Shown here: piece after piece, positions 1-44,182 of the stretch
How positions within the stretch are numbered: the stretch's first letter is position 1
Layout of the letters: every line of letters begins with the position of its first letter
Origin: Ranitomeya imitator
Lineage: Eukaryota
Reading direction: 5' to 3'
NCBI RefSeq assembly: GCF_032444005.1
Contig: NC_091291.1
Coordinates: 137,020,001 to 137,084,000 of the forward strand
Length of the DNA stretch: 64,000 bases
The notes under the pieces: generated by a model
Database searches by the model: none
Seen by the model: only the letters and a program-made list of their open reading frames with translations
What the model was told of the DNA's origin: nothing
Position numbers and translations under genes: made by a program

Positions 1-2099
1 GGTAAGACCCAGAAAGAAATTTCTCAACAAATAGGCTGTTCCCAGAGTGCTGTATCAAGGCACCTCAATGGTAAGTCTGTTGGAAGGAAACAATGTGGCA
101 GAAAACGCTGTACAACGAGAAGAGGAGACCGGACCCTGAGGAAGATTGTGGAGAAGGACCGATTCCAGACCTTGGGGAACCTGAGGAAGCAGTGGACTGA
201 GTCTGGTGTGGAAACATCCAGAGCCACCGTGCACAGGCGTGTGCAGGAAATGGGCTACAGGTGCCGCATTCCCCAGGTAAAGCCACTTTTGAACCATAAA
301 CCGCGGCAGAGGCGCCTGACCTGGGCTACAGAGAAGCAGCACTGGACTGTTGCTAAGTGGTCCCAAGTACTTTTTTCTGATGAAAGCAAATTAGTAACAT
401 AGTAACATAGTTAGTAAGGCCGAAAAAAGACATTTGTCCATCCAGTTCAGCCTATATTCCATCATAATAAATCCCCAGATCTACGTCCTTCTACAGAACC
501 TAATAATTGTATGATACAATATTGTTCTGCTCCAGGAAGACATCCAGGCCTCTCTTGAACCCCTCGACTGAGTTCGCCATCACCACCTCCTCAGGCAAGC
601 AATTCCAGATTCTCACTGCCCTAACAGTAAAGAATCCTCTTCTATGTTGGTGGAAAAACCTTCTCTCCTCCAGACGCAAAGAATGCCCCCTTGTGCCCGT
701 CACCTTCCTTGGTATAAACAGATCCCCAGCGAGATATTTGTATTGTCCCCTTATATACTTATACATGGTTATTAGATCGCCCCTCAGTCGTCTTTTTTCT
801 AGACTAAATAATCCTAATTTCGCTAATCTATCTGGGTATTGTAGTTCTCCCATCCCTCTTATTAATTTTGTTGCCCTCCTTTGTACTCTCTCTAGTTCCA
901 TTATATCCTTCCTGAACACCGGTGCCCAAAACTGGACACAGTACTCCATGTGCGGTCTAACTAGGGATTTGTACAGAGGCAGTATAATGCTCTCATCATG
1001 TGTATCCAGACCTCTTTTAATGCACCCCATGATCCTGTTTGCCTTGGCAGCTGCTGCCTGGCACTGGCTGCTCCAGGTAAGTTTATCATTAACTAGGATC
1101 CCCAAGTCCTTCTCCCTGTCAGATTTACCCAGTGGTTTCCCGTTCAGTGTGTAATGGTGATATTGATTCCCTCTTCCCATGTGTATAACCTTACATTTAT
1201 CATTGTTAAACCTCATCTGCCACCTTTCAGCCCAAGTTTCCAACTTATCCAGATCCATCTGTAGCAAATTTTGCATGTCATTCGGAAATCAAGGTGCCAG
1301 AGTCTGGAGGAAGACTGGGGAGAAGGAAATGCCAAAATGCCTGAAGTCCAGTGTCAAGTACCCACAGTCAGTGATGGTGTGGGGTGCCATGTCAGCTGCT
1401 GGTGTTGGTCCACTGTGTTTCATCAAGGGCAGGGTCAATGCAGCTAGCTATCAGGAGATTTTGGAGCACTTCATGCTTCCATCGGCTGAAATGCTTTATG
1501 GAGATGAAGATTTCATTTTTCAGCACGACCTGGCAACTGCTCACAGTGCCAAAACCACTGGTAAATGGTTTACTGACCATGGTATTACTGTGCTCAATTG
1601 GCCTGCCAACTCTCCTGACCTGAACCCCATAGAGAATCTGTGGGATATTGTGAAGAGAAAGTTGAGAGATGCAAGACCCAACACTCTGGATGAGCTTAAG
1701 GCCGCTATTGAAGCATCCTGGGCCTCCATAACATCTCAGCAGTGTCACAGGCTGATTGCCTCCATGCCACGCCGCATTGAAGCAGTCATTTCTGCTAAAG
1801 GATTCCCGACCAAGTATTGAGTGCATAACTGAACATTATTATTTGATGTTTTTTTTTGTTTGTTATTAAAAAACACTTTTATTTGATTGGATGGGTGAAA
1901 TATGCTAATTTATTGAGACAGGTTTTTTGGGTTATCAGGAGTTGTATGCCAAAATCATCAGTATTAAAACAATAAAAGACCTGACAAATTTCAGTTGGTG
2001 GATAATGAATCTATAATATATGAAAGTTTAATTGTAATCATTACATTATGGTAAATAATGAAATTTAACACTATATGCTAATTTTTTGAGAAGGACCTG
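1..2099 (+). mobile_element. Tc1/mariner DNA transposon (DD34E, IR/DR type), left end outside window, transposase interrupted by CR1 at 393-1262
   Basis: Frame +1 is open from base 1 (GKTQKEISQQIGCSQSAVSRHL...VLFSDESK) and resumes after the CR1 (FCMSFGNQG...FQHD-34 aa-NPIE...FPTKY, stop 1820). Right end ...TTTTGAGAAGGACCTG is followed by TA (2100-2101); an inner direct repeat TATGCTAATTT lies at ~1901. Confidence 0.95.
393..1262 (-). mobile_element. 5'-truncated CR1 LINE (RT C-terminus plus 3' tail) inserted in the Tc1 transposase
   Basis: ORF 500..1276 is a CR1 ORF2 C-terminus. (CTATGTTA)n tail at 393-410; 8-bp duplication AGCAAATT at 385-392 and 1263-1270; near-identical to the copy at 17206-18066. 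Confidence 0.95.
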
Positions 2100-5789: not shown

Positions 5790-6142
5790 GTGGCGATGCC
5801 AGTAGTGGTATTCATTGCTGTCACTGATTGTCTGCAGCGGTCACTTACTGACCACTGAGTCAGTGCTGGATTGACAGGGGATAGAATCAGTGAGCAGAGT
5901 TTCTAAGGTCTGTAGAAAGTTTGTATACACTTTTCTTTTTAAAGTTGGATATCCCTTTAATACCTTTTTTTCATTCAGAAAGATGACAACACAAACCCTT
6001 ATTGCTGATCGACGCTTTTGGTTTAATATGAAGTCTACGATCAGAGACCGCAGAGAGACAATGTACAGTTATATACAGTCCTGTTTCGCTCACACACAAT
6101 CTATAAATTATAAAACACCTGGTCGCTCTCTGCAGCTGGTAA

Positions 6143-6340
6143 CTAGCAGAGGGTGAACGTCTTCCAGTAGAAGTTTTTGCAGGGAGCTTTCCGCTCACGA
6201 GGAAACTTCAAGGAGGGGATCAGCTTGGTGTCGAGGTTGTCGGGGGCCCCTCTTTCCACCTCTAGGGAATTATTCTCTGTGCTGTCCGTCCATCCAGAGA
6301 GCAACTTCAGCAGGAGATCTTCCTGGATTTTACCCAGGTC
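6143..6340 (-). CDS. CORT: SST2/CORT exon 2 (prohormone plus mature SS-14 variant)
   Basis: Acceptor cctgtcctag|GAC; 65 codons plus TAG; mature peptide at 6146-6187. Candidate ATTAAA polyA signal at 6022-6027. Confidence 0.95.
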   Translation of the reverse strand, partial: DLGKIQEDLLLKLLSGWTDSTENNSLEVERGAPDNLDTKLIPSLKFPRERKAPCKNFYWKTFTLC

Positions 6341-9300
6341 CTAGGACAGGAGAAAGGTTATTACCAGGTGAAATGTAAATTTAAAAGGGCTTCTGTCCAT
6401 AGGGCGTCTGGGATTGTAGTTCAGTCCCACTCAGGCTGCAATACCAGACACAGAGATGGATAAGGAGTCTACACACTGAGGTAGAGAAAAACAAAGTGCT
6501 CAACCATAGTGTGTTCAGGGTCAAGCTTCTAAATGTTGTAACAATATCTCAAGGAAGCATGGATCATGGCATTCGTTATTTAAAAAAAAAAAAATGTGAG
6601 GGTAGGATGAAGGCCCCTGCAGTGTCATTGTGTACTCTCATCGCTGGCTCCTGTCTGCAGCTGCCTCTCTGGCTCCTGTCTGCAGCTGCCTCTCTGGCTC
6701 CTTTTGATGAGCGCACACACTGGCATTGAGCTCTACTGTGGAAGTGCAGAGCCACTGATTGACAGTGTTGCCTGCATTCAATCACTGTATGTCAGCATGC
6801 CCGTGGCAAGGGTGCACCAAAGCCTCCAATGCATGCAAAATATTTATTTCTTCTAGCAACTAAAATTTATTCTACATGTATGATATTTACAGGGACTGAG
6901 TCACCTACATACCTGTTTAACTGGTTTTAGACTTTTGGATGTGATTAAAGTTTAAAGGGAGTCAAAGGGGTTTTCCACTACTCGGACAACCCCTTCTGAA
7001 TCCTATGATTTCCCCCAGTAAAATAATAACACTTATACTCCCCACCGGTGCCGTTACAGCAGTGTTGGTACTGGCTTTCCCCAGGGCTCACCTGACATAA
7101 TGGTGTCCGTACTGGAGGTGAGTATAGGTGTTACTATATTACTGGGGGCAAACAAGGGATTGAGAAGGGATTGCGGAGTAGTGGACATCTCCTTTCAGCT
7201 CTGGATCTTCTGTCATTTTCAAATCTACTTTGGATTTCCATTCCTTTCAATTCCAATACAATTTGTTAGCCCTCTGCTTGTTGTCGGTGAATGTTAACAC
7301 TTTTTTCCGTTTAGTAGTAGTAACCCTCTACATATCTAGCACTGCTCAATTGTATCCACTATAGACCATGCTCTGTGAGGGAAACATCCTGGAATCCAGA
7401 TTGATACATTGTAACAAACTAGCAGAGGGATTCCTGCAGTTTCTGCTGATGGTTGTCTAGACTGATACTATTATAACCACTACTCAGCTGAGAGCAGGAC
7501 TCTAGCTATAGCTATACATAGGTTTGCTGCCTTTGAATGGATACAAGGGTTTTTTCATTCACTGACTTCAAAAACATAATTTTAAATTTCTTTAACACAA
7601 AGTCTAGAAAAAAGTTTTTGAATTTTATATGATGGCGATGAAAACTTTAATTATCTAAACTCCAGAAACCCCTGTCCGACATTTGAAGAACCAGTTTCTT
7701 GCTGTTTTGGAGGGTGTGAGACGTCTCGAGATCTCTTTATCTGGATGCTTTATGCAGCAATTAGTTGCAGATGTCCCTGTTTCTGTATAATGGTCTCAAT
7801 TTCACAATATAAACCCGACATTGTGGTTTACATTAACGGGAGTCAATTAACCGCATGTCGGGCTTGCCTCCGACAGATGCGCTAATCGACTACCAGCTGT
7901 TAATGCTCCACACCTCAAATTATCTGCATCACCCCAGAGATGGAGATGTGTGATAGCAAAGTGCAAAATGAGTCACTGCGTTATCGTGCGTTCATTATTC
8001 GATTACCAGGGGGCTCATTGCAATTACTAAGCACTTTATAATGGGAATGGAATATGATGGCTAATGTAGTATCAGCAAAAGCGGGGAGAATAGGTAGAGT
8101 GCGTGTAGCATGGCCTGTGATCAGATTATAGACCCACACAGCACAGAGCCTTAGGGAACAAATTACTTTTAGAAGAATTAGGGAGTAATTATAGGTTCCA
8201 TACCATCTATGGCAAATAGGTTGAAACGCCGTGGCATATTTGGTGGTATTACACTTTTCTCCACTAGGTGGCAATGTAAGATGCATTTTTGGTGGTATAA
8301 TGTGTCCTACACTTGTTGGCCACTAGGTGGCACTGCAGTGGTATATTTTGTGAAGCAATACTGATCCCACATCACATAGTGAATAACTGGCAAATTAGAG
8401 GCATGTATGTTTGTAACAGACATGATCAATGCCCACTATGACCATTGGAAATTAATATTATAGATAATTTGGACATTCATCCCATTGTACCAATCTGATT
8501 TAAATGTATTCAGCTCCATTGCATCAAGCTTCTTCAGTTGTAGATATCCACATACCTATAATACTTTTGAGTTATCTTTATCTTTAATAAGAAAAAATAC
8601 ATAAAGCAATTCTTACACATAAAATAGGTCCCTCCAGAAAAAAAAGGTCTGTAAAATTAAATTACCGAAATATAACCATGCAATCATCCAATGATGATGA
8701 AAAACATACACAGTACCACATTGAACACTCTGCTCCTAGCTTATCTTCACCTTTTCAGTATTGGTTTCCATTAATGTACAGCACAATACATATGGTACTG
8801 CAATGGGGTCATACTTAACCCCTACCCAGGAATATGAGACAAGTAACCTAAAACTTGAAATATTTACTGAAATGTATGACTCTGGATCCAAAGAGAATCA
8901 ACTTTGCTGCCACAAGCCAAACTTCATTACTTGGCACTTGTACACCTCAGTCTTGAACTATTTCAGTATCCCTTTTATTCCAATGTTTTTCATGGCTGTA
9001 GGAAGTAGGACCCTGCATAGGTTATCCTGGAAGAAAAATGGGGCCACTGAGACCGAACATTCCCTTTCCCATTTCCAATGCACAGCAATAATAGATATAT
9101 AAGGGAACCGTCATAATTTTATGGATGCTGGTGCAATTTGCAAAGTAGTTTCCAGATATGTATCAATCAGATTAAATACAAATTCCACAGGGCACAACCC
9201 TCTAAAGTCCGTTTGTAGAAAAGCTGGGTGCAGATCACTATCATATTAAAGGGTGCTCTCATCTTAAACCTTTGCCCACAGGATATGCCATAAATATCTG

Positions 9301-12300
9301 ATAGATAAGGGTCTCTGTTTTAAGAGGGGGGGTTCTGTCCCGTGGTACTATCCCTAGATAAGTGTCCTCCCACATGTGACTTTTCCTATTCATTTGGAAT
9401 GAATAAAAGTGCTTGCTTGGCAATTTTCAAAACCTCTGGGTTTAATGGAAGATGTTTCTTCACTTTTTCCAGGGTTGTGAGGGACTGCTTGGACTCATTA
9501 GGCAGCCATATAGGAGCAGGGCATATAACATCCCATCATCCAGCCTTCCCAGGAAGTATGACTCTACTCTGACCTCCTGAACAGTACAGCATCTATTTCA
9601 CTTTTTCAGGTAGGAGATTTCAATCGATTTCTATCATAACCAATTCATTCATCAATTTCTTATCACACCGTTGTCCCTAATGTCACTGGGAAAATCTTAT
9701 CTGCAAATGATCTTATCGATTAGCTCTGTTATTGTGTATGGACTGAGGATGATTAGCGATGTGCAAGACTGGGGGCATAATTACCCTTGCTAGATCTTGT
9801 AAAGAAGGGCTTAAGGGTATGTGCACACGTTCAGGTTTTTCAAACTCATTAAAAACGCATACAGTATGCATCCTATCATTTAGAATGCATTCTGCAATTT
9901 TTGTGCACATGATGTGTTTTTTTCCGCGAAAAAAACGCATCGCGGTAAAAAAAGCAGCATGTTCATTAATTTTGTGGGTTTTTTTCGTGTTTTCCCACTA
10001 TTCTATGCATTTGGAAAAAAATGCATCAAAAACGCGCAAAAAAACGCATCAAAAACGCGTAAAAACGCATGCGGATTTCTGGCAGAAATGTCAGTTTTTT
10101 TGTCAGCAAAATTTCTGCCAGAAATCCTGACGTGTGCACATAGCCTAAAGGGCGATTTCTCTGTAAAATGATGGAGCCCAACCTAGTCCTACAGGTTATC
10201 CATTCTGTCAGATAACTTGGGCTTCCTGGACTCAAATGGACAATCTGTACCCCCACTTACCATGTGCCGTTTGATTCTGGTGGCCCTTCTGTGGACAAAT
10301 GACCTATGCCCCTCCTTCCAGGCACCAGTTGTGATGGCTACCTCTGTACCCCCTATAGCTACGGCTCTGCAGCCCTACCTGTTCAGAAGTAATCAGTTCC
10401 CCATTATTAGTTTCACGCTCCTTTGTCGAAAAGTCCCAATGATTGAAATCTCCAATGAGCCCTAAAGGGGGTTTAGTTCTAGACCCAGAACGTCCAGGAT
10501 GATGGCAGTAGATAAGGGGATATAGAATTCATAGCCATGAGTCTGACCAGACGTGTCTGACCATCTTAGAAATTGCATTTTTAAATTGCAGTTTTTTAAT
10601 TGCTATGAATTAGACTAGAATTCCATGGGGCATTTGAGCATTCATCACTGCTGTACTTTCATCATCCTCATCACCACCTGTATCCTCTAATCAAGCTGTT
10701 TTGTCTACCCACAGGTATGCTGCTGTCCATCTACTCTGCCTTTCCTGCAATGTGTGTTTATGTGAACTGCATATAATTCCCACCTGGTATGCTTTGCTTA
10801 CCCATTGTTTTCTATCCATTCGTATTTCACTTCCCTTGCTTCTTGCTTGCATACCTGAGTGGCCATCTACCCCACCCCCTCTTTATGACCTGGCTTAACT
10901 GTGAACATGTGCTCTAGACACACACGCCCACATCCTCCCTCTCAGCTGTGAGCCCTTAGGTGCCCATAAATTCATAGCCATGAGTCTGACCAGACGTGTC
11001 TGACCATCTTAGAAATTGCATTTTTAAATTGCTATGAATTAGACTAGAATTGGACTGGAAGGTAAAGGAATAGAAAACCACTATAATGTTTCGGTTTCTT
11101 TTCACATTCACCCCCATACTACTCTATTTCTTCCTATCTCCTGTAGTCCCTCCACCCAGTAAAGAACTAGTCATTTCTCCCTCCATCCTCCCCAGTCATC
11201 TCACCTCCTCCACAGAACTATTCCTCCACATACAATCCTTTCTCGCCAGGCACACACGGCCACATCATGACCTATCCAGCTCACACCTTCTAACGCTCTG
11301 TCTGCTGCTCCTCATTGCTGGCGACATATCCCCAAATCCTGGCCCTCCTCATCACATCCCCACATTCATTTCTAATCCCCTGCCACGATCCTCTACACGT
11401 CCTCGCAACCACAGTAACCTCATACCCATTCATCCTGCCCCCACTCCCCCAATTTCCCTATCTGGAGCACTATGGAACGCACGCTCTGTCTGCAATAAAC
11501 TTCCATTTATCCATGACCTCTTTATCAATAACAAACTCTCCTTCCTCGGCATCACTGAAACCTGGCTCACCCCTTCTGACACAGCCTCCCCTGCGGCACT
11601 CTCTTACGGTGGCTTCCACCTTTCTCACACACCCCGCCCCAGCAGCAAGCATGGCGGAGGAGTTGGTTTTCTCCTGTCAGATAACTGCTCCTTCACCCCA
11701 ATCCCACTGCCACCCTCTGTTATCCTCCCTTCCTTTGAGGTGCACTCTGTGCGCATCTACTCCCCCTCCAACCTCCAACTGGCTGTCATCTACCGTCCCC
11801 CAGGGCCAGCCACCACCTTCTTCGACCACTTCACCACCTGGCTACTCCACTTCCTCGCCGCTGACATCCCCACTATCATCATGGGCGACTTCAACATCCC
11901 CATTGACACTTCCCTCTCAGCTGCCACTAAACTTCTATCTCTCACTTCCTCCTTTGGCCTCACTCAATGGTCTTCTACAGCCACCCACAAAGATGGTCAC
12001 ACACTGGACCTCATTCTCACCCGCCTCTGCTCCCTATCTAACCTCTCAAACTCACCTCTTCCTCTTTCTGACCACAACCTACTTACATTCTCTTCCCTTT
12101 CCACTCCTTGTCTACAACCCCCACCCCACAAACTCTCACACCCTCGCAGAAATCTTAAACACCTTGATCTTCACTCACTCTCTGAATCCCTCCTCCCTCT
12201 CACAGACATAAGCTCCCTACACAATGCGGATGATGCTGCCGCTCTATATAACACCACAATAGCTGCAGCTTTGGAATCTCTTGCCCCTCTCACACATACC

Positions 12301-15027
12301 AAAGCTCGCAAAATCAACAGACAACCCTGGCACACCAGCATGACAAAAGAACTGAGGCGAGCTTCCAGAGCTGCTGAGCGCAGATGGAAAAGATCCCACT
12401 CCATCGAGCACTTCATCGCATTCAAACAGTCCCTCACTACTTTCAAGACCACATTCACCACAGCAAAACAAACCTACTTCTCATCTCTCATATCCTCCCT
12501 GTCTCACAACCCCAAACAGTTATTCAACACCTTCAACTCTCTCCTCCGTCCCCCAGCACCTCCTCCCTCCCCACTCATCTCAGCTGAAGACTTCGCCTCA
12601 TTTTTCAAGCAGAAAATTGAGAACATCCGAGACAATTTTAGTAAACAACCCCCAGAACCCTTCCTCCCAACTACCCAGCCCTCCACCTCCAAAACCAACT
12701 TCTCCACCATTACATAAGACGGACTCTCCACTCTACTCTCAAGATCGCATCTCACCACCTGTGCACTTGACCCACTCCCATCCCACTTCATCCCAAACCT
12801 CACCACAGTCTTCATCCCAACCCTAACCCATCTATTTAACCTATCACTAACAACTGGCATTTTCCCCTCAAGCTTTAAACATGCCACAATCACACCTATC
12901 CTCAAAAAGCCCTCTCTTGACCCATCCTCTGTATCTAGCTATCGCCCTATATCATTTCTCCCCTTTGCCTCAAAACTACTGGAACAACATGTCCATATTG
13001 AACTGTCCTCCCATCTATCTTCCTGCTCCTTCTTCGACCGCTTTCAATCAGGCTTCCGGTCACACCACTCCACTGAAACTGCCCTAACTAAGGTCACCAA
13101 TGACCTATTAACCGCCAAGAGCAAGCGACACTACTCTGTCCTCCTCCTCCTGGACCTGTCCTCTGCCTTTGACACAGTGGACCATTCCCTGCTGCTGCAG
13201 ACCCTCTCATCCCTTGGCATCACAGAATTGGCCCTATCCTGGATCTCATCATACCTAACTGACCGTACATTCAGCGTCTCCCACTCACACACCACCTCCT
13301 CACCTCGCCCCCTATCTGTCGGAGTCCCGCAAGGTTCAGTTCTAGGACCCCTGCTCTTCTCCATCTACACCTTTGGCCTGGGACAGCTCATAGAATCTCA
13401 CGGCTTTCAGTATCATCTCTATGCTGACGACACACAGATCTACATCTCTGGACCAGATATCACCTCCCTACTAACCAGAATCCCTCAATGTCTGTCTGCT
13501 ATTTCATCCTTCTTCTCCACTAGATTTCTAAAACTTAACATGGACAAAACAGAATTCATCATCTTTCCCCCATCTCACGCAATCTCCCCAACGAACCTAT
13601 CCATTACAGTAAACGGCTGCCCACTCTCCCCAGTCCCACAAGCCCGCTGTCTTGGGGTAATCCTTGACACTGATCTCTCCTTTAAACCACATATCCAAAC
13701 CCTTTCCACTTCCTGCCGCCTCCAACTCAAAAATATTTCACGGATCCGCACATTCCTAAACCAAGAATCTGCAAAAACCCTAGTCCATGCCCTCATCACC
13801 TCCCGCCTTGACTACTGTAACCTCCTGCTCTGTGGCCTCCCCTCTAACACTCTTGCACCCCTCCAATCTATTCTAAACTCTGCTGCCCGACTAATCCACC
13901 TGTCCCCCCGCTATTCCCCGGCCTCTCCCCTCTGTCAATCCCTGCACTGGCTCCCCATCACCCAGAGACTCCAGTACAAAAGCCTAACCATGACATATAA
14001 AGCCATCCACAACCTGTCTCCTCCATACATCTGTGACCTCGTCTCCCGGTACTTTCCTGCACGCAACCTCCGATCCTCACAAGATCTCCTTCTCTACTCC
14101 CCTATTATCTCCTCTTCCCACAATCGCATACAAGATTTCTCTCGTGCATCCCCCCTATTCTGGAATGCTCTACCACAACATATCAGACTCTCGCCTACCA
14201 TCGAAACCTTCAAAAAGAACCTGAAGACCCACCTCTTCCGACAAGCCTACAACCTGCAGTAACCACCGATTGACCAAACCGCTGCACGGCCAGCTCTACC
14301 CTCACCTACTGTATCCTCACCCATCCCTTGTAGATTGTGAGCCCTCGCGGGCAGGGTCCTCTCTCCTCCTGTACCAGTTGTGACTTGTATTTTTCAAGAT
14401 TATTGTACTTGTTTTATTATGTATACCCCTCCTCACATGTAAAGCGCCATGGAATAAATGGCGCTATAATAATAAATAATAATAATAATAGAAGATGTGG
14501 GGGTGGGAAAAGACCTAATTCACTCCATACAATGGGGCATAGACTTGACCTGAGACTTCTTCCCAGTTCTGGATATTTAGAGGCATTTTGGTGATTATGT
14601 GATGACAAATGTACTACGTACGCCCTGAAATACAGAAAAATGTAAGTTTGCTAGTAGGTAGATGATCTCATGGACAACCTGCTCCTTTCGAGACATTTTT
14701 GTGCATTTGTCGGATGAGAGAAATGTTCATTAAGAAGCGACGTTTTATACCTGATCATTGTGGGACTACAAACAATTGTTAGTCTTCACAAACTCACTTG
14801 AGCTGTTAAATAATCTTGAAATTATAGGGTTTATGGAGTTATGGGAATATAGATTAACCCTTTCCTGGATGGGTATGTAGAATGAAAGGTGACTATAGAT
14901 GTGTCTTTGTTCCATCACTCACCTGATTGTGACCTAGTCTCATTCTGTTGTCAAATGGTTGAGAGAGCCCCCAGGCCCCCCACACGAGCAGCATGAGCAT
15001 GGTCCCAGCAGAGCCCAAGAGCAGCAT
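6143..15027 (-). CDS. CORT: Prepro-somatostatin-2 / cortistatin (frog PSS2-like), 2 exons, 100 aa, join complement(14923..15027, 6143..6340)
   Basis: [35 protein letters not shown]|[65 protein letters not shown]. Signal peptide, phase-0 GT-AG intron, RERK processing site and C-terminal Cys-bridged SS-14-type peptide; closely resembles the recalled ranid PSS2 precursor. Confidence 0.93.
8261..8335 (+). promoter_or_regulatory. Two tandem CTCF-consensus sites in the SST2 intron
   Basis: CCACTAGGTGGC at 8261-8272 and 8320-8331 (the second in TGGCCACTAGGTGGCACTG); motif match only. Confidence 0.5.
9815..10145. mobile_element. PIF/Harbinger-type MITE
   Basis: TIR GGGTATGTGCACACGTTCAGG / CCTGACGTGTGCACATAGCC; TAA on both flanks. 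Confidence 0.8.
10625..14490 (+). mobile_element. Near full-length L2 LINE (APE + RT ORF2 11086-14262 with one premature stop), antisense in the SST2 intron; 5' boundary uncertain
   Basis: APE motifs (WNARS, ITETWL, MGDFN, SDH) and RT motifs ([23 protein letters not shown]). ORFs 11086..12717 and 13177..14262 are in the same frame, separated by a single TAA at 12715-12717. 3' stem-loop at 14443-14465, then (AAT)n tail. Confidence 0.93.
14923..15027 (-). CDS. CORT: SST2/CORT exon 1 (signal peptide)
   Basis: ATG at 15027, 35 codons, donor CAG|gtgagt; hydrophobic signal peptide. Confidence 0.9.
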
Positions 15028-15093
15028 CTTTAGATCTGGACACGATGCACAGGATAGCAAGGAAGATGCAGGAATGAGCTGAGGATCCGCAGC

Positions 15094-15140
15094 TTATATC
15101 TTCCTCAAACCCAAATGTGATGTCATCGCAGATAATTAAA
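15094..15140 (-). promoter_or_regulatory. Putative SST2/CORT core promoter: TATAA, CRE-like TGACATCA and TAAT element
   Basis: TATAA at 15094-15098 (~70 nt upstream of ATG), one-mismatch CRE at 15118-15125, AATTTAATTATC at ~15131-15142. Confidence 0.55.
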
Positions 15141-17205: not shown

Positions 17206-19225
17206 ACATAGTAACATAGTTAGTAAGGCCGAAAAAAGACATTTGTCCATCCAGTTCAGCCTATATTCCATCATAATAAATCCCCAGATCTACGTCCTTC
17301 TACAGAACCTAATAATTGTATGATACAATATTGTTCTGCTCCAGGAAGACATCCAGGCCTCTCTTGAACCCCTCGACTGAGTTCGCCATCACCACCTCCT
17401 CAAGCAAGCAATTCCAGATTCTCACTGCCCTAACAGTAAAGAATCCTCTTCTATGTTGGTGGAAAAACCTTCTCTCCTCCAGACGCAAAGAATGCCCCCT
17501 TGTGCCCGTCACCTTCCTTGGTATAAACAGATCCTCAGCGAGATATTTGTATTGTCCCCTTATATACTTATACATGGTTATTAGATCGCCCCTCAGTCGT
17601 CTTTTTTCTAGACTAAATAATCCTAATTTCGCTAATCTATCTGGGTATTGTAGTTCTCCCATCCCCTCTATTAATTCTGTTGCCCTCCTTTGTACTCTCT
17701 CTAGTTCCATTATATCCTTCCTGAGCACCGGTGCCCAAAACTGGACACAGTACTCCATGTGCGGTCTAACTAGGGATTTGTACAGAGGCAGTATAATGCT
17801 CTCATCATGTGTATCCAGACCTCTTTTAATGCACCCCATGATCCTGTTTGCCTTGGCAGCTGCTGCCTGGCACTGGCTGCTCCAGGTAAGTTTATCATTA
17901 ACTAGGATCCCCAAGTCCTTCTCCCTGTCAGATTTACCCAGTGGTTTCCCGTTCAGTGTGTAATGGTGACATTGATTCCTTCTTCCCATGTGTATAACCT
18001 TACATTTATCATTGTTAAACCTCATCTGCCACCTTTCAGCCCAAGTTTCCAACTTATCCAGATCCATCTGTAGCAGAATACTATCTTCTCTTGTATTAAC
18101 TGCTTTACATAGTTTTGTATCATCTGCAAATATCGATATTTTACTGTGTAAACCTTCTACCAGATCATTAATGAATATGTTGAAGAGAACAGGTCCCAAT
18201 ACTGACCCCTGCGGTACCCCACTGGTCACAGCGACCCAGTTAGAGACTATACCATTTATAACCACCCTCTGCTTTCTATCACTAAGCCAGTTACTAACCC
18301 ATTTACACACATTTTCCCCCAGACCAAGCATTCTCATTTTGTGTACCAACCTCTTGTGCGGCACTGTATCAAACGCTTTGGAAAAATCAAGATATACCAC
18401 GTCCAATGACTCACCGTGGTCCAGCCTATAGCTTACCTCTTCATAAAAACTGATTAGATTGGTTTGACAGGAGCGATTTCTCATAAACCCATGCTGATAT
18501 GGAGTTAAACAGTTATTCTCATTGAGATAATCCAGAATAACATCCTTCAGAAACCCTTCAAATATTTTACCAACAATAGAGGTTAGACTTACTGGCCTAT
18601 AATTTCCAGGATCAATTTTAGAGCCCTTTTTGAATATTGGCACCACATTTGCTATGCGCCAGTCCTGCGGAACAGACCCCGTCGCTATAGAGTCCCTAAA
18701 AATAAGAAATAATGGTTTATCTATTACATTACATAGTTCTCTTAGTACTCGTGGGTGTATGTCATCCGGACCCGGAGATTTATCTATTTTAATCTTATTT
18801 AGCCGGTTTCGCACCTCTTCTTGGGTTAGATTGGTGACCCTTAATATAGGGTTTTCATTGTTTCTTGGGATTTCACCTAGCATTTCATTTTCCACCGTGA
18901 AGGTGTTTAATATGTTAGATTTTTCCTCGTCATCTACAACCATTCTTTCCTCACTATTTTTTAAGGGGCCTACATTTTCAGTTTTTATTCTTTTACTATT
19001 GATATAGTTGAAGAACAGTTTGGGATTAGTTTTACTCTCCTTAGCAATGTGCTTCTCTGTTTCCTTTTTGGCAGCTTTAATTAGTTTTTTAGATAAAGTA
19101 TTTTTCTCCCTATAGTTTTTTAGAGCTTCAATGGTGCCATCCTGCTTTAGTAGTGCAAATGCTTTCTTTTTACTGTTAATTGCCTGTCTTACTTCTTTGT
19201 TTAGCCACATTGGGTTTTTCCTATT
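17206..19225 (-). mobile_element. 5'-truncated CR1 LINE with open RT domain
   Basis: ORF 17309..19210 (633 aa) with YRPVSL, YLDFSKAFD, QGSVLGP, FADD; (CTATGTTA)n tail at ~17206-17220. Confidence 0.95.

Positions 19226-21490: not shown

Positions 21491-44182
<22,692 letters not shown>

What the first reader, a model, noticed from the sequence alone, without database searches (positions are those of the whole stretch)
6143..6200. Hidden somatostatin-2/cortistatin gene encodes an unusual hormone, [14 protein letters not shown] ([Pro2,Tyr7,Leu13]-SS-14)
Seen: minus-strand codons ...CGT GAG CGG AAA GCT CCC TGC AAA AAC TTC TAC TGG AAG ACG TTC ACC CTC TGC TAG. They join a signal-peptide exon 8.6 kb away (15027-14923) into an intact 100-aa precursor that the ORF track misses. 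Established: the ranid frog SS2 peptide is [Pro2,Met13]SS-14 (APCKNFFWKTFTMC), Phe7-Trp8-Lys9-Thr10 is the receptor pharmacophore, and Tyr at the Phe7-equivalent position occurs in teleost [Tyr7,Gly10]SS-14 and in Tyr3-octreotide drugs. Relative to the recalled ranid precursor, this one also lacks ~4 residues just before RERK (KFPRERK vs KFPRLSLRERK). Inference: a lineage-specific SS2 ligand with a natural pharmacophore substitution, possibly with altered SSTR subtype or MRGPR/ghrelin-receptor selectivity. I do not know of this exact peptide being described.
Basis: partly seen in the sequence, partly recalled or inferred. Interest (0 to 1): 0.8.

Follow-up and report, generated by a model that had tools for sequence, protein, structure and literature searches.

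The report
Poison-frog cortistatin gene with Tyr7 peptide
This is the ordinary, expressed and already annotated cortistatin (somatostatin-2) gene of the mimic poison frog; its hormone carries a rare but conservative Phe-to-Tyr change that two other frog lineages also have.

Summary
Minus-strand exon 1 (15027-14923) and exon 2 (6340-6143) give a 100-aa precursor ending RERK|[14 protein letters not shown].

RNA contigs from public runs prove the 14923/6340 splice and a poly(A) tail at 6002. In three Ranitomeya imitator data sets from three studies, contigs show no difference at the Tyr7 (TAC) or Leu13 (CTC) codons.

The gene is not hidden. It is 100% identical to RefSeq XP_069599205.1, "cortistatin [Ranitomeya imitator]", whose gene span is the same 8885 bases.

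- **Leu13:** not unusual. Dendrobates, Phyllobates, Anomaloglossus, Hyla, Dendropsophus and Rhinophrynus have it, and position 13 varies across Anura.
- **Short FPxRERK linker:** shared by all the hyloids sampled. Only one further Pro codon is missing in R. imitator.
- **Tyr7:** rare, in 3 of 124 SS2/CORT-type precursors surveyed. It also occurs in Bufo gargarizans and Rhinoderma darwinii, and in a closer coded relative, so it arose at least twice.

The exact 14-mer was found only in Ranitomeya, and no paper in the library holds it. Tyr at this position is tolerated in teleost somatostatins and Tyr3-octreotide drugs.

Verdict: a real, ordinary ortholog with a mildly interesting recurrent substitution. 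Any change in receptor selectivity is untested.

The parts
14923..15027 (-). Coding part of exon 1: ATG plus 35 codons (signal peptide and start of the propeptide), followed by a GT donor at 14922-14921
   Evidence: Loose ends of junction contigs in X2, X16 and X6 equal the reverse complement of 14923-14952. RNA-type runs hold 0.62-0.67 of the words of 14860-15110.
6341..14922 (-). Single phase-0 intron of 8582 nt, enlarged by a LINE-like insertion
   Evidence: GT..AG ends. Depth drops at 6340 in X2, X16 and X6. Endonuclease and reverse-transcriptase ORFs lie at 11086-14262 on the + strand.
6143..6340 (-). Coding part of exon 2: 65 codons plus TAG
   Evidence: It is 100% identical to XP_069599205.1. 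RNA contigs cover it with no coding differences in X2, X1 and X16.
6188..6199 (-). RERK prohormone-convertase processing site
   Evidence: R85 and K86 are invariant and R83 and E84 nearly invariant in 17 frog precursors. RxRK precedes the 14-mer in nearly all precursors surveyed. Cleavage itself is inferred.
6146..6187 (-). Predicted mature peptide [14 protein letters not shown], i.e. [Pro2,Tyr7,Leu13]SS-14. Tyr7 is TAC at 6169-6167 and Leu13 is CTC at 6151-6149.
   Evidence: No other letters at these codons in three R. imitator runs; relative X6 keeps TAC. The predicted monoisotopic mass with the disulfide is 1718.795.
6002..6142 (-). 3' UTR with an ATTAAA signal at 6027-6022 and a poly(A) site at 6002
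   Evidence: Contigs in X1 and X16 end at 6002 with 21-22 T on the + strand. Sequence.
8868..9026 (-). Cryptic intronic exon with an AG acceptor, a GTAAAT donor and an in-frame TAG, joined to exon 2 in one run; a minor non-productive isoform
   Evidence: The X2 loose end at 6340 maps uniquely to 8868-8897. Sequence.
15093..15125 (-). Putative core promoter: CRE-like TGACATCA (15125-15118) and TATAAG (15098-15093), 66-98 nt upstream of the ATG
   Evidence: Read directly; function is inferred. The transcription start was not mapped.

Best explanation
This is the functional cortistatin / preprosomatostatin-2 (PSS2) gene of Ranitomeya imitator, orthologous to the characterised Pelophylax ridibundus PSS2. 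Two coding exons are spliced across an 8.6-kb intron that carries a LINE-like element, and the mRNA is polyadenylated at 6002. The 100-aa precursor has an N-terminal signal peptide. It is predicted to be cut after RERK by prohormone convertases, releasing a disulfide-bridged 14-mer, [14 protein letters not shown], that acts on somatostatin receptors. Leu13 and the short linker are inherited hyloid or anuran features. The Phe7-to-Tyr change (TTC to TAC) is a conservative, tolerated substitution that arose in the Ranitomeya lineage and independently in at least one other hyloid lineage. It most likely has little effect on function. Shown here: the gene model, splicing, polyadenylation, codon identity and distribution across species. 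Inferred: processing, disulfide formation, receptor action and near-neutrality.
For: The gene model matches RefSeq exactly, with the same 8885-nt span. Pfam PF03002 scores above its cut-off. Exon 2 is about 70% identical to ranid somatostatin-2, the 90% cluster that holds P87385 of Pelophylax ridibundus. Junction contigs run into exon 1 in X2, X16 and X6. Poly(A) tails are seen in X1 and X16, and a SMART template-switch oligo in X16 marks it as cDNA. There is no variant at the Tyr7 or Leu13 codons, while 3' UTR differences at 6119 and 6120 show the contigs differ from the assembled sequence. Of 124 SS2/CORT-type precursors, 121 have Phe7; the three with Tyr7 are all hyloid frogs. Position 13 is Ser in nearly all sequences outside Anura (Ala in two lizards) and M, L, V, I or A within Anura. 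A tree built without the 14-mer groups Ranitomeya with the Phe7 species Dendrobates and Phyllobates (support 91/88). On that tree Tyr7 needs at least 2 changes, and 0 of 200 bootstrap trees need only one. Rhinoderma uses the same TAC codon. On tolerance of Tyr: teleost pss2 peptides carry Tyr7, and only Trp8-Lys9 is stated to be essential (PMC11993745). Replacing Phe3 with Tyr3 in octreotide keeps or improves SSTR2 affinity (PMC7504749 and PMC6148080). An SRM exon lies just upstream, which fits the cortistatin chromosomal neighbourhood.
Against: Phe7 is otherwise invariant from sharks to birds. Three appearances within one superfamily could therefore reflect selection rather than drift. No peptide, receptor or tissue data exist here. 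Contigs drop rare variants, so a minor Phe7 allele in R. imitator is not excluded. One run (X1) shows only an unspliced form reading 76 nt into the intron and holds none of the exon 1 words.
Confidence: 0.75

Rival explanations
1. Tyr7 is an adaptive re-tuning of the ligand. The added hydroxyl shifts SSTR-subtype selectivity or potency, possibly together with receptor changes, and was selected repeatedly in hyloid frogs.
For: Phe7 is invariant in 121 of 124 precursors across vertebrates, yet Tyr7 arose at least twice within Hyloidea through the same TTC-to-TAC change. Substitutions at Phe7 are stated to affect binding affinity and selectivity (PMC11993745). Tyr3 changes octreotide affinity.
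Against: Phe to Tyr is the most conservative change available and needs only one base. The sample is small, three lineages, and no receptor data exist. Close relatives with Phe7 have otherwise near-identical precursors. No test for selection was possible with the DNA available.
Confidence: 0.18
2. The Tyr7 or Leu13 codons are assembly errors or rare alleles of the sequenced individual.
For: A single-base difference from Dendrobates, and one genome assembly as the source.
Against: Contigs from three RNA data sets of three studies (X2, X1, X16) show no other letter at 6149-6151 or 6167-6169, although they differ from the assembly elsewhere. A related organism (X6) also has TAC.
Confidence: 0.03
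3. The locus is a decaying or non-productive gene copy, and the peptide is not made.
For: A cryptic exon carrying a stop codon is spliced to exon 2 in one run, and an unspliced contig is seen in another. The signal peptide has Trp where other frogs have Arg.
Against: The reading frame is intact and the processing site and both cysteines are conserved. Canonical spliced, polyadenylated mRNA is present in several runs. Exon 2 is about 91% identical in DNA to that of a frog from another hyloid family.
Confidence: 0.04

Closest known systems
Frog preprosomatostatin-2 (PSS2, UniProt P87385, Pelophylax ridibundus), which yields [Pro2,Met13]SS-14
   Same: The precursor layout, the conserved [12 protein letters not shown] propeptide block, the RERK site, Pro2, the Cys3 and Cys14 pair, and the WKTFT core. 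The ranid cluster that holds it is about 70% identical over exon 2.
   Different: Tyr7 instead of Phe7, Leu13 instead of Met13, and a linker four residues shorter before RERK.
Cortistatin of Dendrobates tinctorius and Phyllobates terribilis (XP_073441172.1, XP_073511486.1)
   Same: The same family of frogs, about 90% identity for D. tinctorius, the Leu13 peptide and the short hyloid linker.
   Different: They keep Phe7 and have FPPRERK, which is one more Pro than R. imitator.
Somatostatin-2-like / cortistatin of Bufo gargarizans and Rhinoderma darwinii (XP_044133520.1, XP_075695484.1)
   Same: A Tyr7 peptide, encoded by TAC in Rhinoderma, and the same gene structure.
   Different: Ile13 instead of Leu13 and FPQRERK. 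They belong to other hyloid families, and the gene tree places their Tyr7 apart from that of Ranitomeya.
Teleost pss2 peptides with [Tyr7,Gly10]SS-14, and Tyr3-octreotide or lanreotide drugs
   Same: Tyr at the position equivalent to Phe7, with receptor binding retained.
   Different: These come from a different paralogue or are synthetic octapeptides. The teleost peptides also change Thr10, and none has Pro2 and Leu13.

Membership tests
Somatostatin/cortistatin family (Pfam PF03002) | C-terminal domain scores above the Pfam gathering threshold | tested here: met
   43.2 bits against 20.3, residues 83-100
Somatostatin/cortistatin family (Pfam PF03002) | Cys3 and Cys14 pair flanking a Phe7-Trp8-Lys9-Thr10 core at the precursor's C-terminus | tested here: met
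   Both cysteines and W-K-T are present and the peptide is C-terminal. Phe7 is replaced by Tyr, a substitution also seen in teleost members.
Somatostatin/cortistatin family (Pfam PF03002) | Basic processing site directly before the 14-mer | tested here: met
   RERK at 6199-6188, conserved across 17 frog precursors
Somatostatin/cortistatin family (Pfam PF03002) | N-terminal signal peptide | not tested
   A hydrophobic segment, [17 protein letters not shown], is conserved in position with other frogs. No signal-peptide predictor was run.
SS2 / PSS2 / CORT orthologue group | Pro at position 2 of the 14-mer | tested here: met
   APCK.... Most SS2/CORT-type precursors surveyed begin with AP.
SS2 / PSS2 / CORT orthologue group | Groups with characterised frog PSS2 and follows the species relationships | tested here: met
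   The best hits are all anuran somatostatin-2 or cortistatin. The tree recovers hyloid, ranoid and dendrobatid groupings.
SS2 / PSS2 / CORT orthologue group | Conserved chromosomal neighbourhood (the SRM/EXOSC10 region, human 1p36) | tested here: inconclusive
   A spermidine-synthase domain exon lies at about 22.4 kb on the same strand. EXOSC10 is known only from an earlier unchecked note. That CORT and SRM both lie at human 1p36.22 is recalled, not tested.
SS2 / PSS2 / CORT orthologue group | Transcribed and spliced into one mRNA | tested here: met
   Junction contigs and poly(A) tails; exon 1 words held by the same study's runs
SS2 / PSS2 / CORT orthologue group | Mature peptide is produced and activates somatostatin receptors | not testable with these tools
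   Needs mass spectrometry and receptor assays

The most novel reading that the evidence does not exclude
Phe7, which is invariant in SS2/cortistatin from sharks to birds, has been replaced by Tyr repeatedly and only in hyloid frogs: the Ranitomeya lineage, Bufo and Rhinoderma. This may be because the hydroxyl re-tunes subtype selectivity of the SS2 ligand relative to the co-existing canonical SS-14. That would be a natural counterpart of the Phe3-to-Tyr3 change used in octreotide drugs, possibly matched by changes in the receptor pocket.
Probability: 0.15. Interest if true: 0.5.

Novelty: new member of a known kind. Interest (0 to 1): 0.3.

Why it matters
If the Tyr7 peptide behaves differently from [Pro2,Met13]SS-14 on frog or human receptors, it would be a natural pharmacophore variant. 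It would show how position 7 sets subtype selectivity, and how duplicated somatostatin ligands diverge. As it stands, the result is mainly a clean confirmation. The gene is real, expressed, correctly annotated in RefSeq and orthologous to a well-studied frog neuropeptide. The one rare feature is a conservative substitution already present in other public frog annotations.

Tried and rejected
- **Assembly error or polymorphism at Tyr7 or Leu13:** rejected by contigs from three R. imitator runs and one relative.
- **Unannotated "hidden" gene:** rejected, since XP_069599205.1 has the same span.
- **Leu13 and the whole 4-residue deletion as Ranitomeya novelties:** rejected by the alignment. Only one Pro codon is lineage-specific, and the relative X6 still has it, seen as a GAG insertion behind 6198.
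- **A single origin of Tyr7:** not supported by the tree.
- **Literature:** searches for the peptide string, and for cortistatin together with Ranitomeya, found nothing.
- **Seeing the intron as a joint:** not possible, because the two exons are 8.6 kb apart and the stretch was limited to 6 kb. The junction was read from loose ends instead.
- **DNA from other species:** The look-up of encoding contigs gave none for Bufo, Dendrobates or Anomaloglossus because the files were too large. Codon-level selection tests were therefore not possible.
- **Earlier scan notes:** a word search for somatostatin or cortistatin found nothing.
- **Transcription start:** not mapped. The X16 junction contig carries about 220 nt beyond the junction, which may include adapter sequence.

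Full report
**Observation**

- Exon 2 (6340-6143) translates to 65 residues ending [18 protein letters not shown]. An AG acceptor sits at 6342-6341.
- Exon 1 (15027-14923) gives 35 residues starting with a hydrophobic signal-like segment, followed by a GT donor.
- Both boundaries are phase 0, so the precursor is 100 aa.
- Tyr7 is TAC at 6169-6167 and Leu13 is CTC at 6151-6149.

A mechanical ORF list misses the gene only because it is spliced and exon 2 has no early in-frame start codon.

**Identity**

A search with exon 2 returned a 100-aa protein that is 100% identical, named cortistatin [Ranitomeya imitator] (XP_069599205.1). Its called gene spans 8885 nt on assembly GCA_032444005.1, the same span as 15027-6143. 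The window therefore comes from the mimic poison frog, and the gene is already annotated, not hidden.

Pfam PF03002 (Somatostatin/Cortistatin) scores 43.2 bits against a cut-off of 20.3. All the best relatives are anuran somatostatin-2 or cortistatin. They include the ranid cluster that holds the experimentally characterised Pelophylax ridibundus PSS2 (P87385), which is about 70% identical over exon 2.

An exon carrying the C-terminal part of the spermidine-synthase domain lies at about 22.4 kb on the same strand. An earlier scan note places EXOSC10 further on (not checked). From memory, not tested here, this fits the cortistatin neighbourhood on human 1p36.

**Expression, splicing and codon check**

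Two searches for public runs found RNA-type runs that hold roughly the exonic share of each stretch. I laid four runs on 5800-6600.

- **Splice junction.** In X2, X16 and X6, contigs fit up to 6342 and then continue with GATTGTGACCTAGTCTCATTCTGTTGTCAA. This is the reverse complement of the last bases of exon 1, and the two-base overlap arises because both the intron end and the exon 1 end read CT. The 14923/6340 junction is therefore shown.
- **Polyadenylation.** Contigs in X1 and X16 end at 6002 with 21-22 T, meaning poly(A) on the gene strand. This is 20 nt past an ATTAAA at 6027-6022.
- **Library type.** X16 also carries a SMART template-switch oligo, which marks it as cDNA.
- **Codons.** In X2, X1 and X16 (three studies) there is no other letter at the Tyr7 or Leu13 codons. 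Two of them, X2 and X1, differ from the assembly at 6119 and/or 6120 in the 3' UTR, so they are not mere copies of the assembled sequence.

Caveats: contigs drop rare variants. X1 shows only an unspliced form reading 76 nt into the intron and holds none of the exon 1 words.

**A closer relative**

Run X6 (coded organism B, 95-99% alike) gave a spliced contig covering 6155-6342 plus 111 further letters, enough to run through most of the coding part of exon 1.

- It keeps TAC at Tyr7.
- It has three extra bases behind 6198 that restore a second Pro (FPPRERK, as in Dendrobates).
- It has two amino-acid changes, which I read as N70D and E64D, and one silent change.
- It shares Asn58, Val63 and Gly66 with R. 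imitator rather than with D. tinctorius, so it is nearer than Dendrobates.

Tyr7 therefore predates the one-codon deletion and is not private to R. imitator. The contig stops before Leu13.

**Distribution across species**

| Feature | Where it is found |
|---|---|
| Phe7 with Leu13 | Dendrobates tinctorius, Phyllobates terribilis, Anomaloglossus, Dendropsophus, Hyla sarda, Rhinophrynus |
| Phe7 with Met13 | Engystomops, Eleutherodactylus, Ascaphus, ranoid frogs |
| Phe7 with Ile13 | Leptodactylus |
| Phe7 with Val13 | Pelobates, Pelodytes, Spea, Leptobrachium |
| Phe7 with Ala13 | Discoglossus, Bombina |
| Tyr7 with Ile13 | Bufo gargarizans, Rhinoderma darwinii |
| Tyr7 with Leu13 | Ranitomeya imitator only |

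These come from the alignment and cluster members and from the wider survey below.

A profile search plus a script over 124 SS2/CORT-type precursors from sharks to birds gave 86 with APCKNFFWKTFTSC. Tyr7 occurs in only those three frogs. Ser13 holds in nearly all sequences outside Anura (two lizards have Ala13), while anurans have M, L, V, I or A.

Every hyloid sampled has the short FPxRERK-type linker, against FPRLSLRERK in ranids. R. imitator lacks one further codon.

A maximum-likelihood tree built without the 14-mer groups Ranitomeya with Dendrobates and Phyllobates (support 91/88). It places Bufo and Rhinoderma elsewhere. Tyr7 needs at least two changes on this tree, and none of 200 bootstrap trees needs only one.

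The Rhinoderma locus (L001) has the same exon 2 structure, about 91% DNA identity and the same TAC codon.

**Mechanism**

By homology with frog PSS2 and the family in general, the signal peptide is removed. Prohormone convertases then cut after RERK, and the C-terminal 14-mer forms the Cys3-Cys14 bridge and acts on somatostatin receptors. All of these steps are inferred.

Published work bears on Tyr7:

- A tilapia study states that only Trp8-Lys9 is essential and that Phe7 and Thr10 can be substituted, with effects on affinity and selectivity. It also notes that teleost pss2 peptides carry Tyr7 (PMC11993745).
- Two reviews state that replacing Phe3 with Tyr3 in octreotide improves affinity, SSTR2 in particular (PMC7504749; PMC6148080).

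The most likely reading is a tolerated, near-neutral change. A modest shift in selectivity is possible but untested.

**Novelty**

No paper in the library holds the peptide string, and none holds cortistatin together with Ranitomeya. The exact 14-mer was found only in R. imitator. However, the protein is in RefSeq, and its two unusual residues each occur in other annotated frogs. I class it as a new member of a known kind, of modest interest. The recurrence of Phe7-to-Tyr within Hyloidea, at a position otherwise invariant across vertebrates, is the only point worth following up.

**Other features**

- The 8.6-kb intron carries a LINE-like element on the opposite strand: an endonuclease ORF at 11086-12717 and a reverse-transcriptase ORF at 13177-14262.
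- A cryptic exon (9026-8868, GTAAAT donor, in-frame TAG) is joined to exon 2 in X2.
- A CRE-like TGACATCA and a TATAAG box precede the ATG.

Noticed in passing
window 8868-9026 (-): A cryptic exon inside the cortistatin intron, with a proper AG acceptor and a GTAAAT donor, is spliced to exon 2 in run X2. It contains an in-frame TAG, so it is a minor non-productive isoform.
   Followed up: partly
window 11086-14262 (+): A LINE-like element antisense to the gene inside the cortistatin intron. It has an Exo_endo_phos endonuclease ORF (11086-12717) and a reverse-transcriptase ORF (13177-14262), and accounts for much of the intron's length.
   Followed up: partly
window 17309-19210 (-) and 1179-1820 (+): A 633-aa ORF with a reverse-transcriptase domain lies between cortistatin and SRM. 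A DDE_3 transposase-like ORF lies downstream of cortistatin.
   Followed up: no
window 24000-40000: The + strand is strongly purine-rich (GC skew about +0.6, AT skew about +0.6), producing many long spurious minus-strand ORFs.
   Followed up: no
window 21799-22503 (-): The ORF's first 36 residues match the C-terminal part of the spermine/spermidine synthase domain (PF01564 positions 146-180). SRM therefore lies upstream of cortistatin on the same strand.
   Followed up: partly
window 6341-6416 and run X1: The X1 contig runs from the poly(A) site through exon 2 and 76 nt into the intron (unspliced, with variants at 6359 and 6412). X1 holds none of the exon 1 words. This may be pre-mRNA, intron retention or a 3'-biased library.
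   Followed up: no
window 15093-15125 (-): A CRE-like TGACATCA lies 20 nt upstream of a TATAAG box. As I recall it, this arrangement resembles the CRE plus TATA of somatostatin promoters.
   Followed up: no
window 6119-6120: Two adjacent 3' UTR differences from the assembly: C>T in X2, and T>C in X2 and X1. They indicate allelic variation among R. imitator samples.
   Followed up: no
P0001 residue 19 (window about 14973-14971): The signal-peptide region has Trp (WGAWGLSQP) where most of the other neobatrachian frogs sampled have Arg (WGARGLSQP).
   Followed up: no
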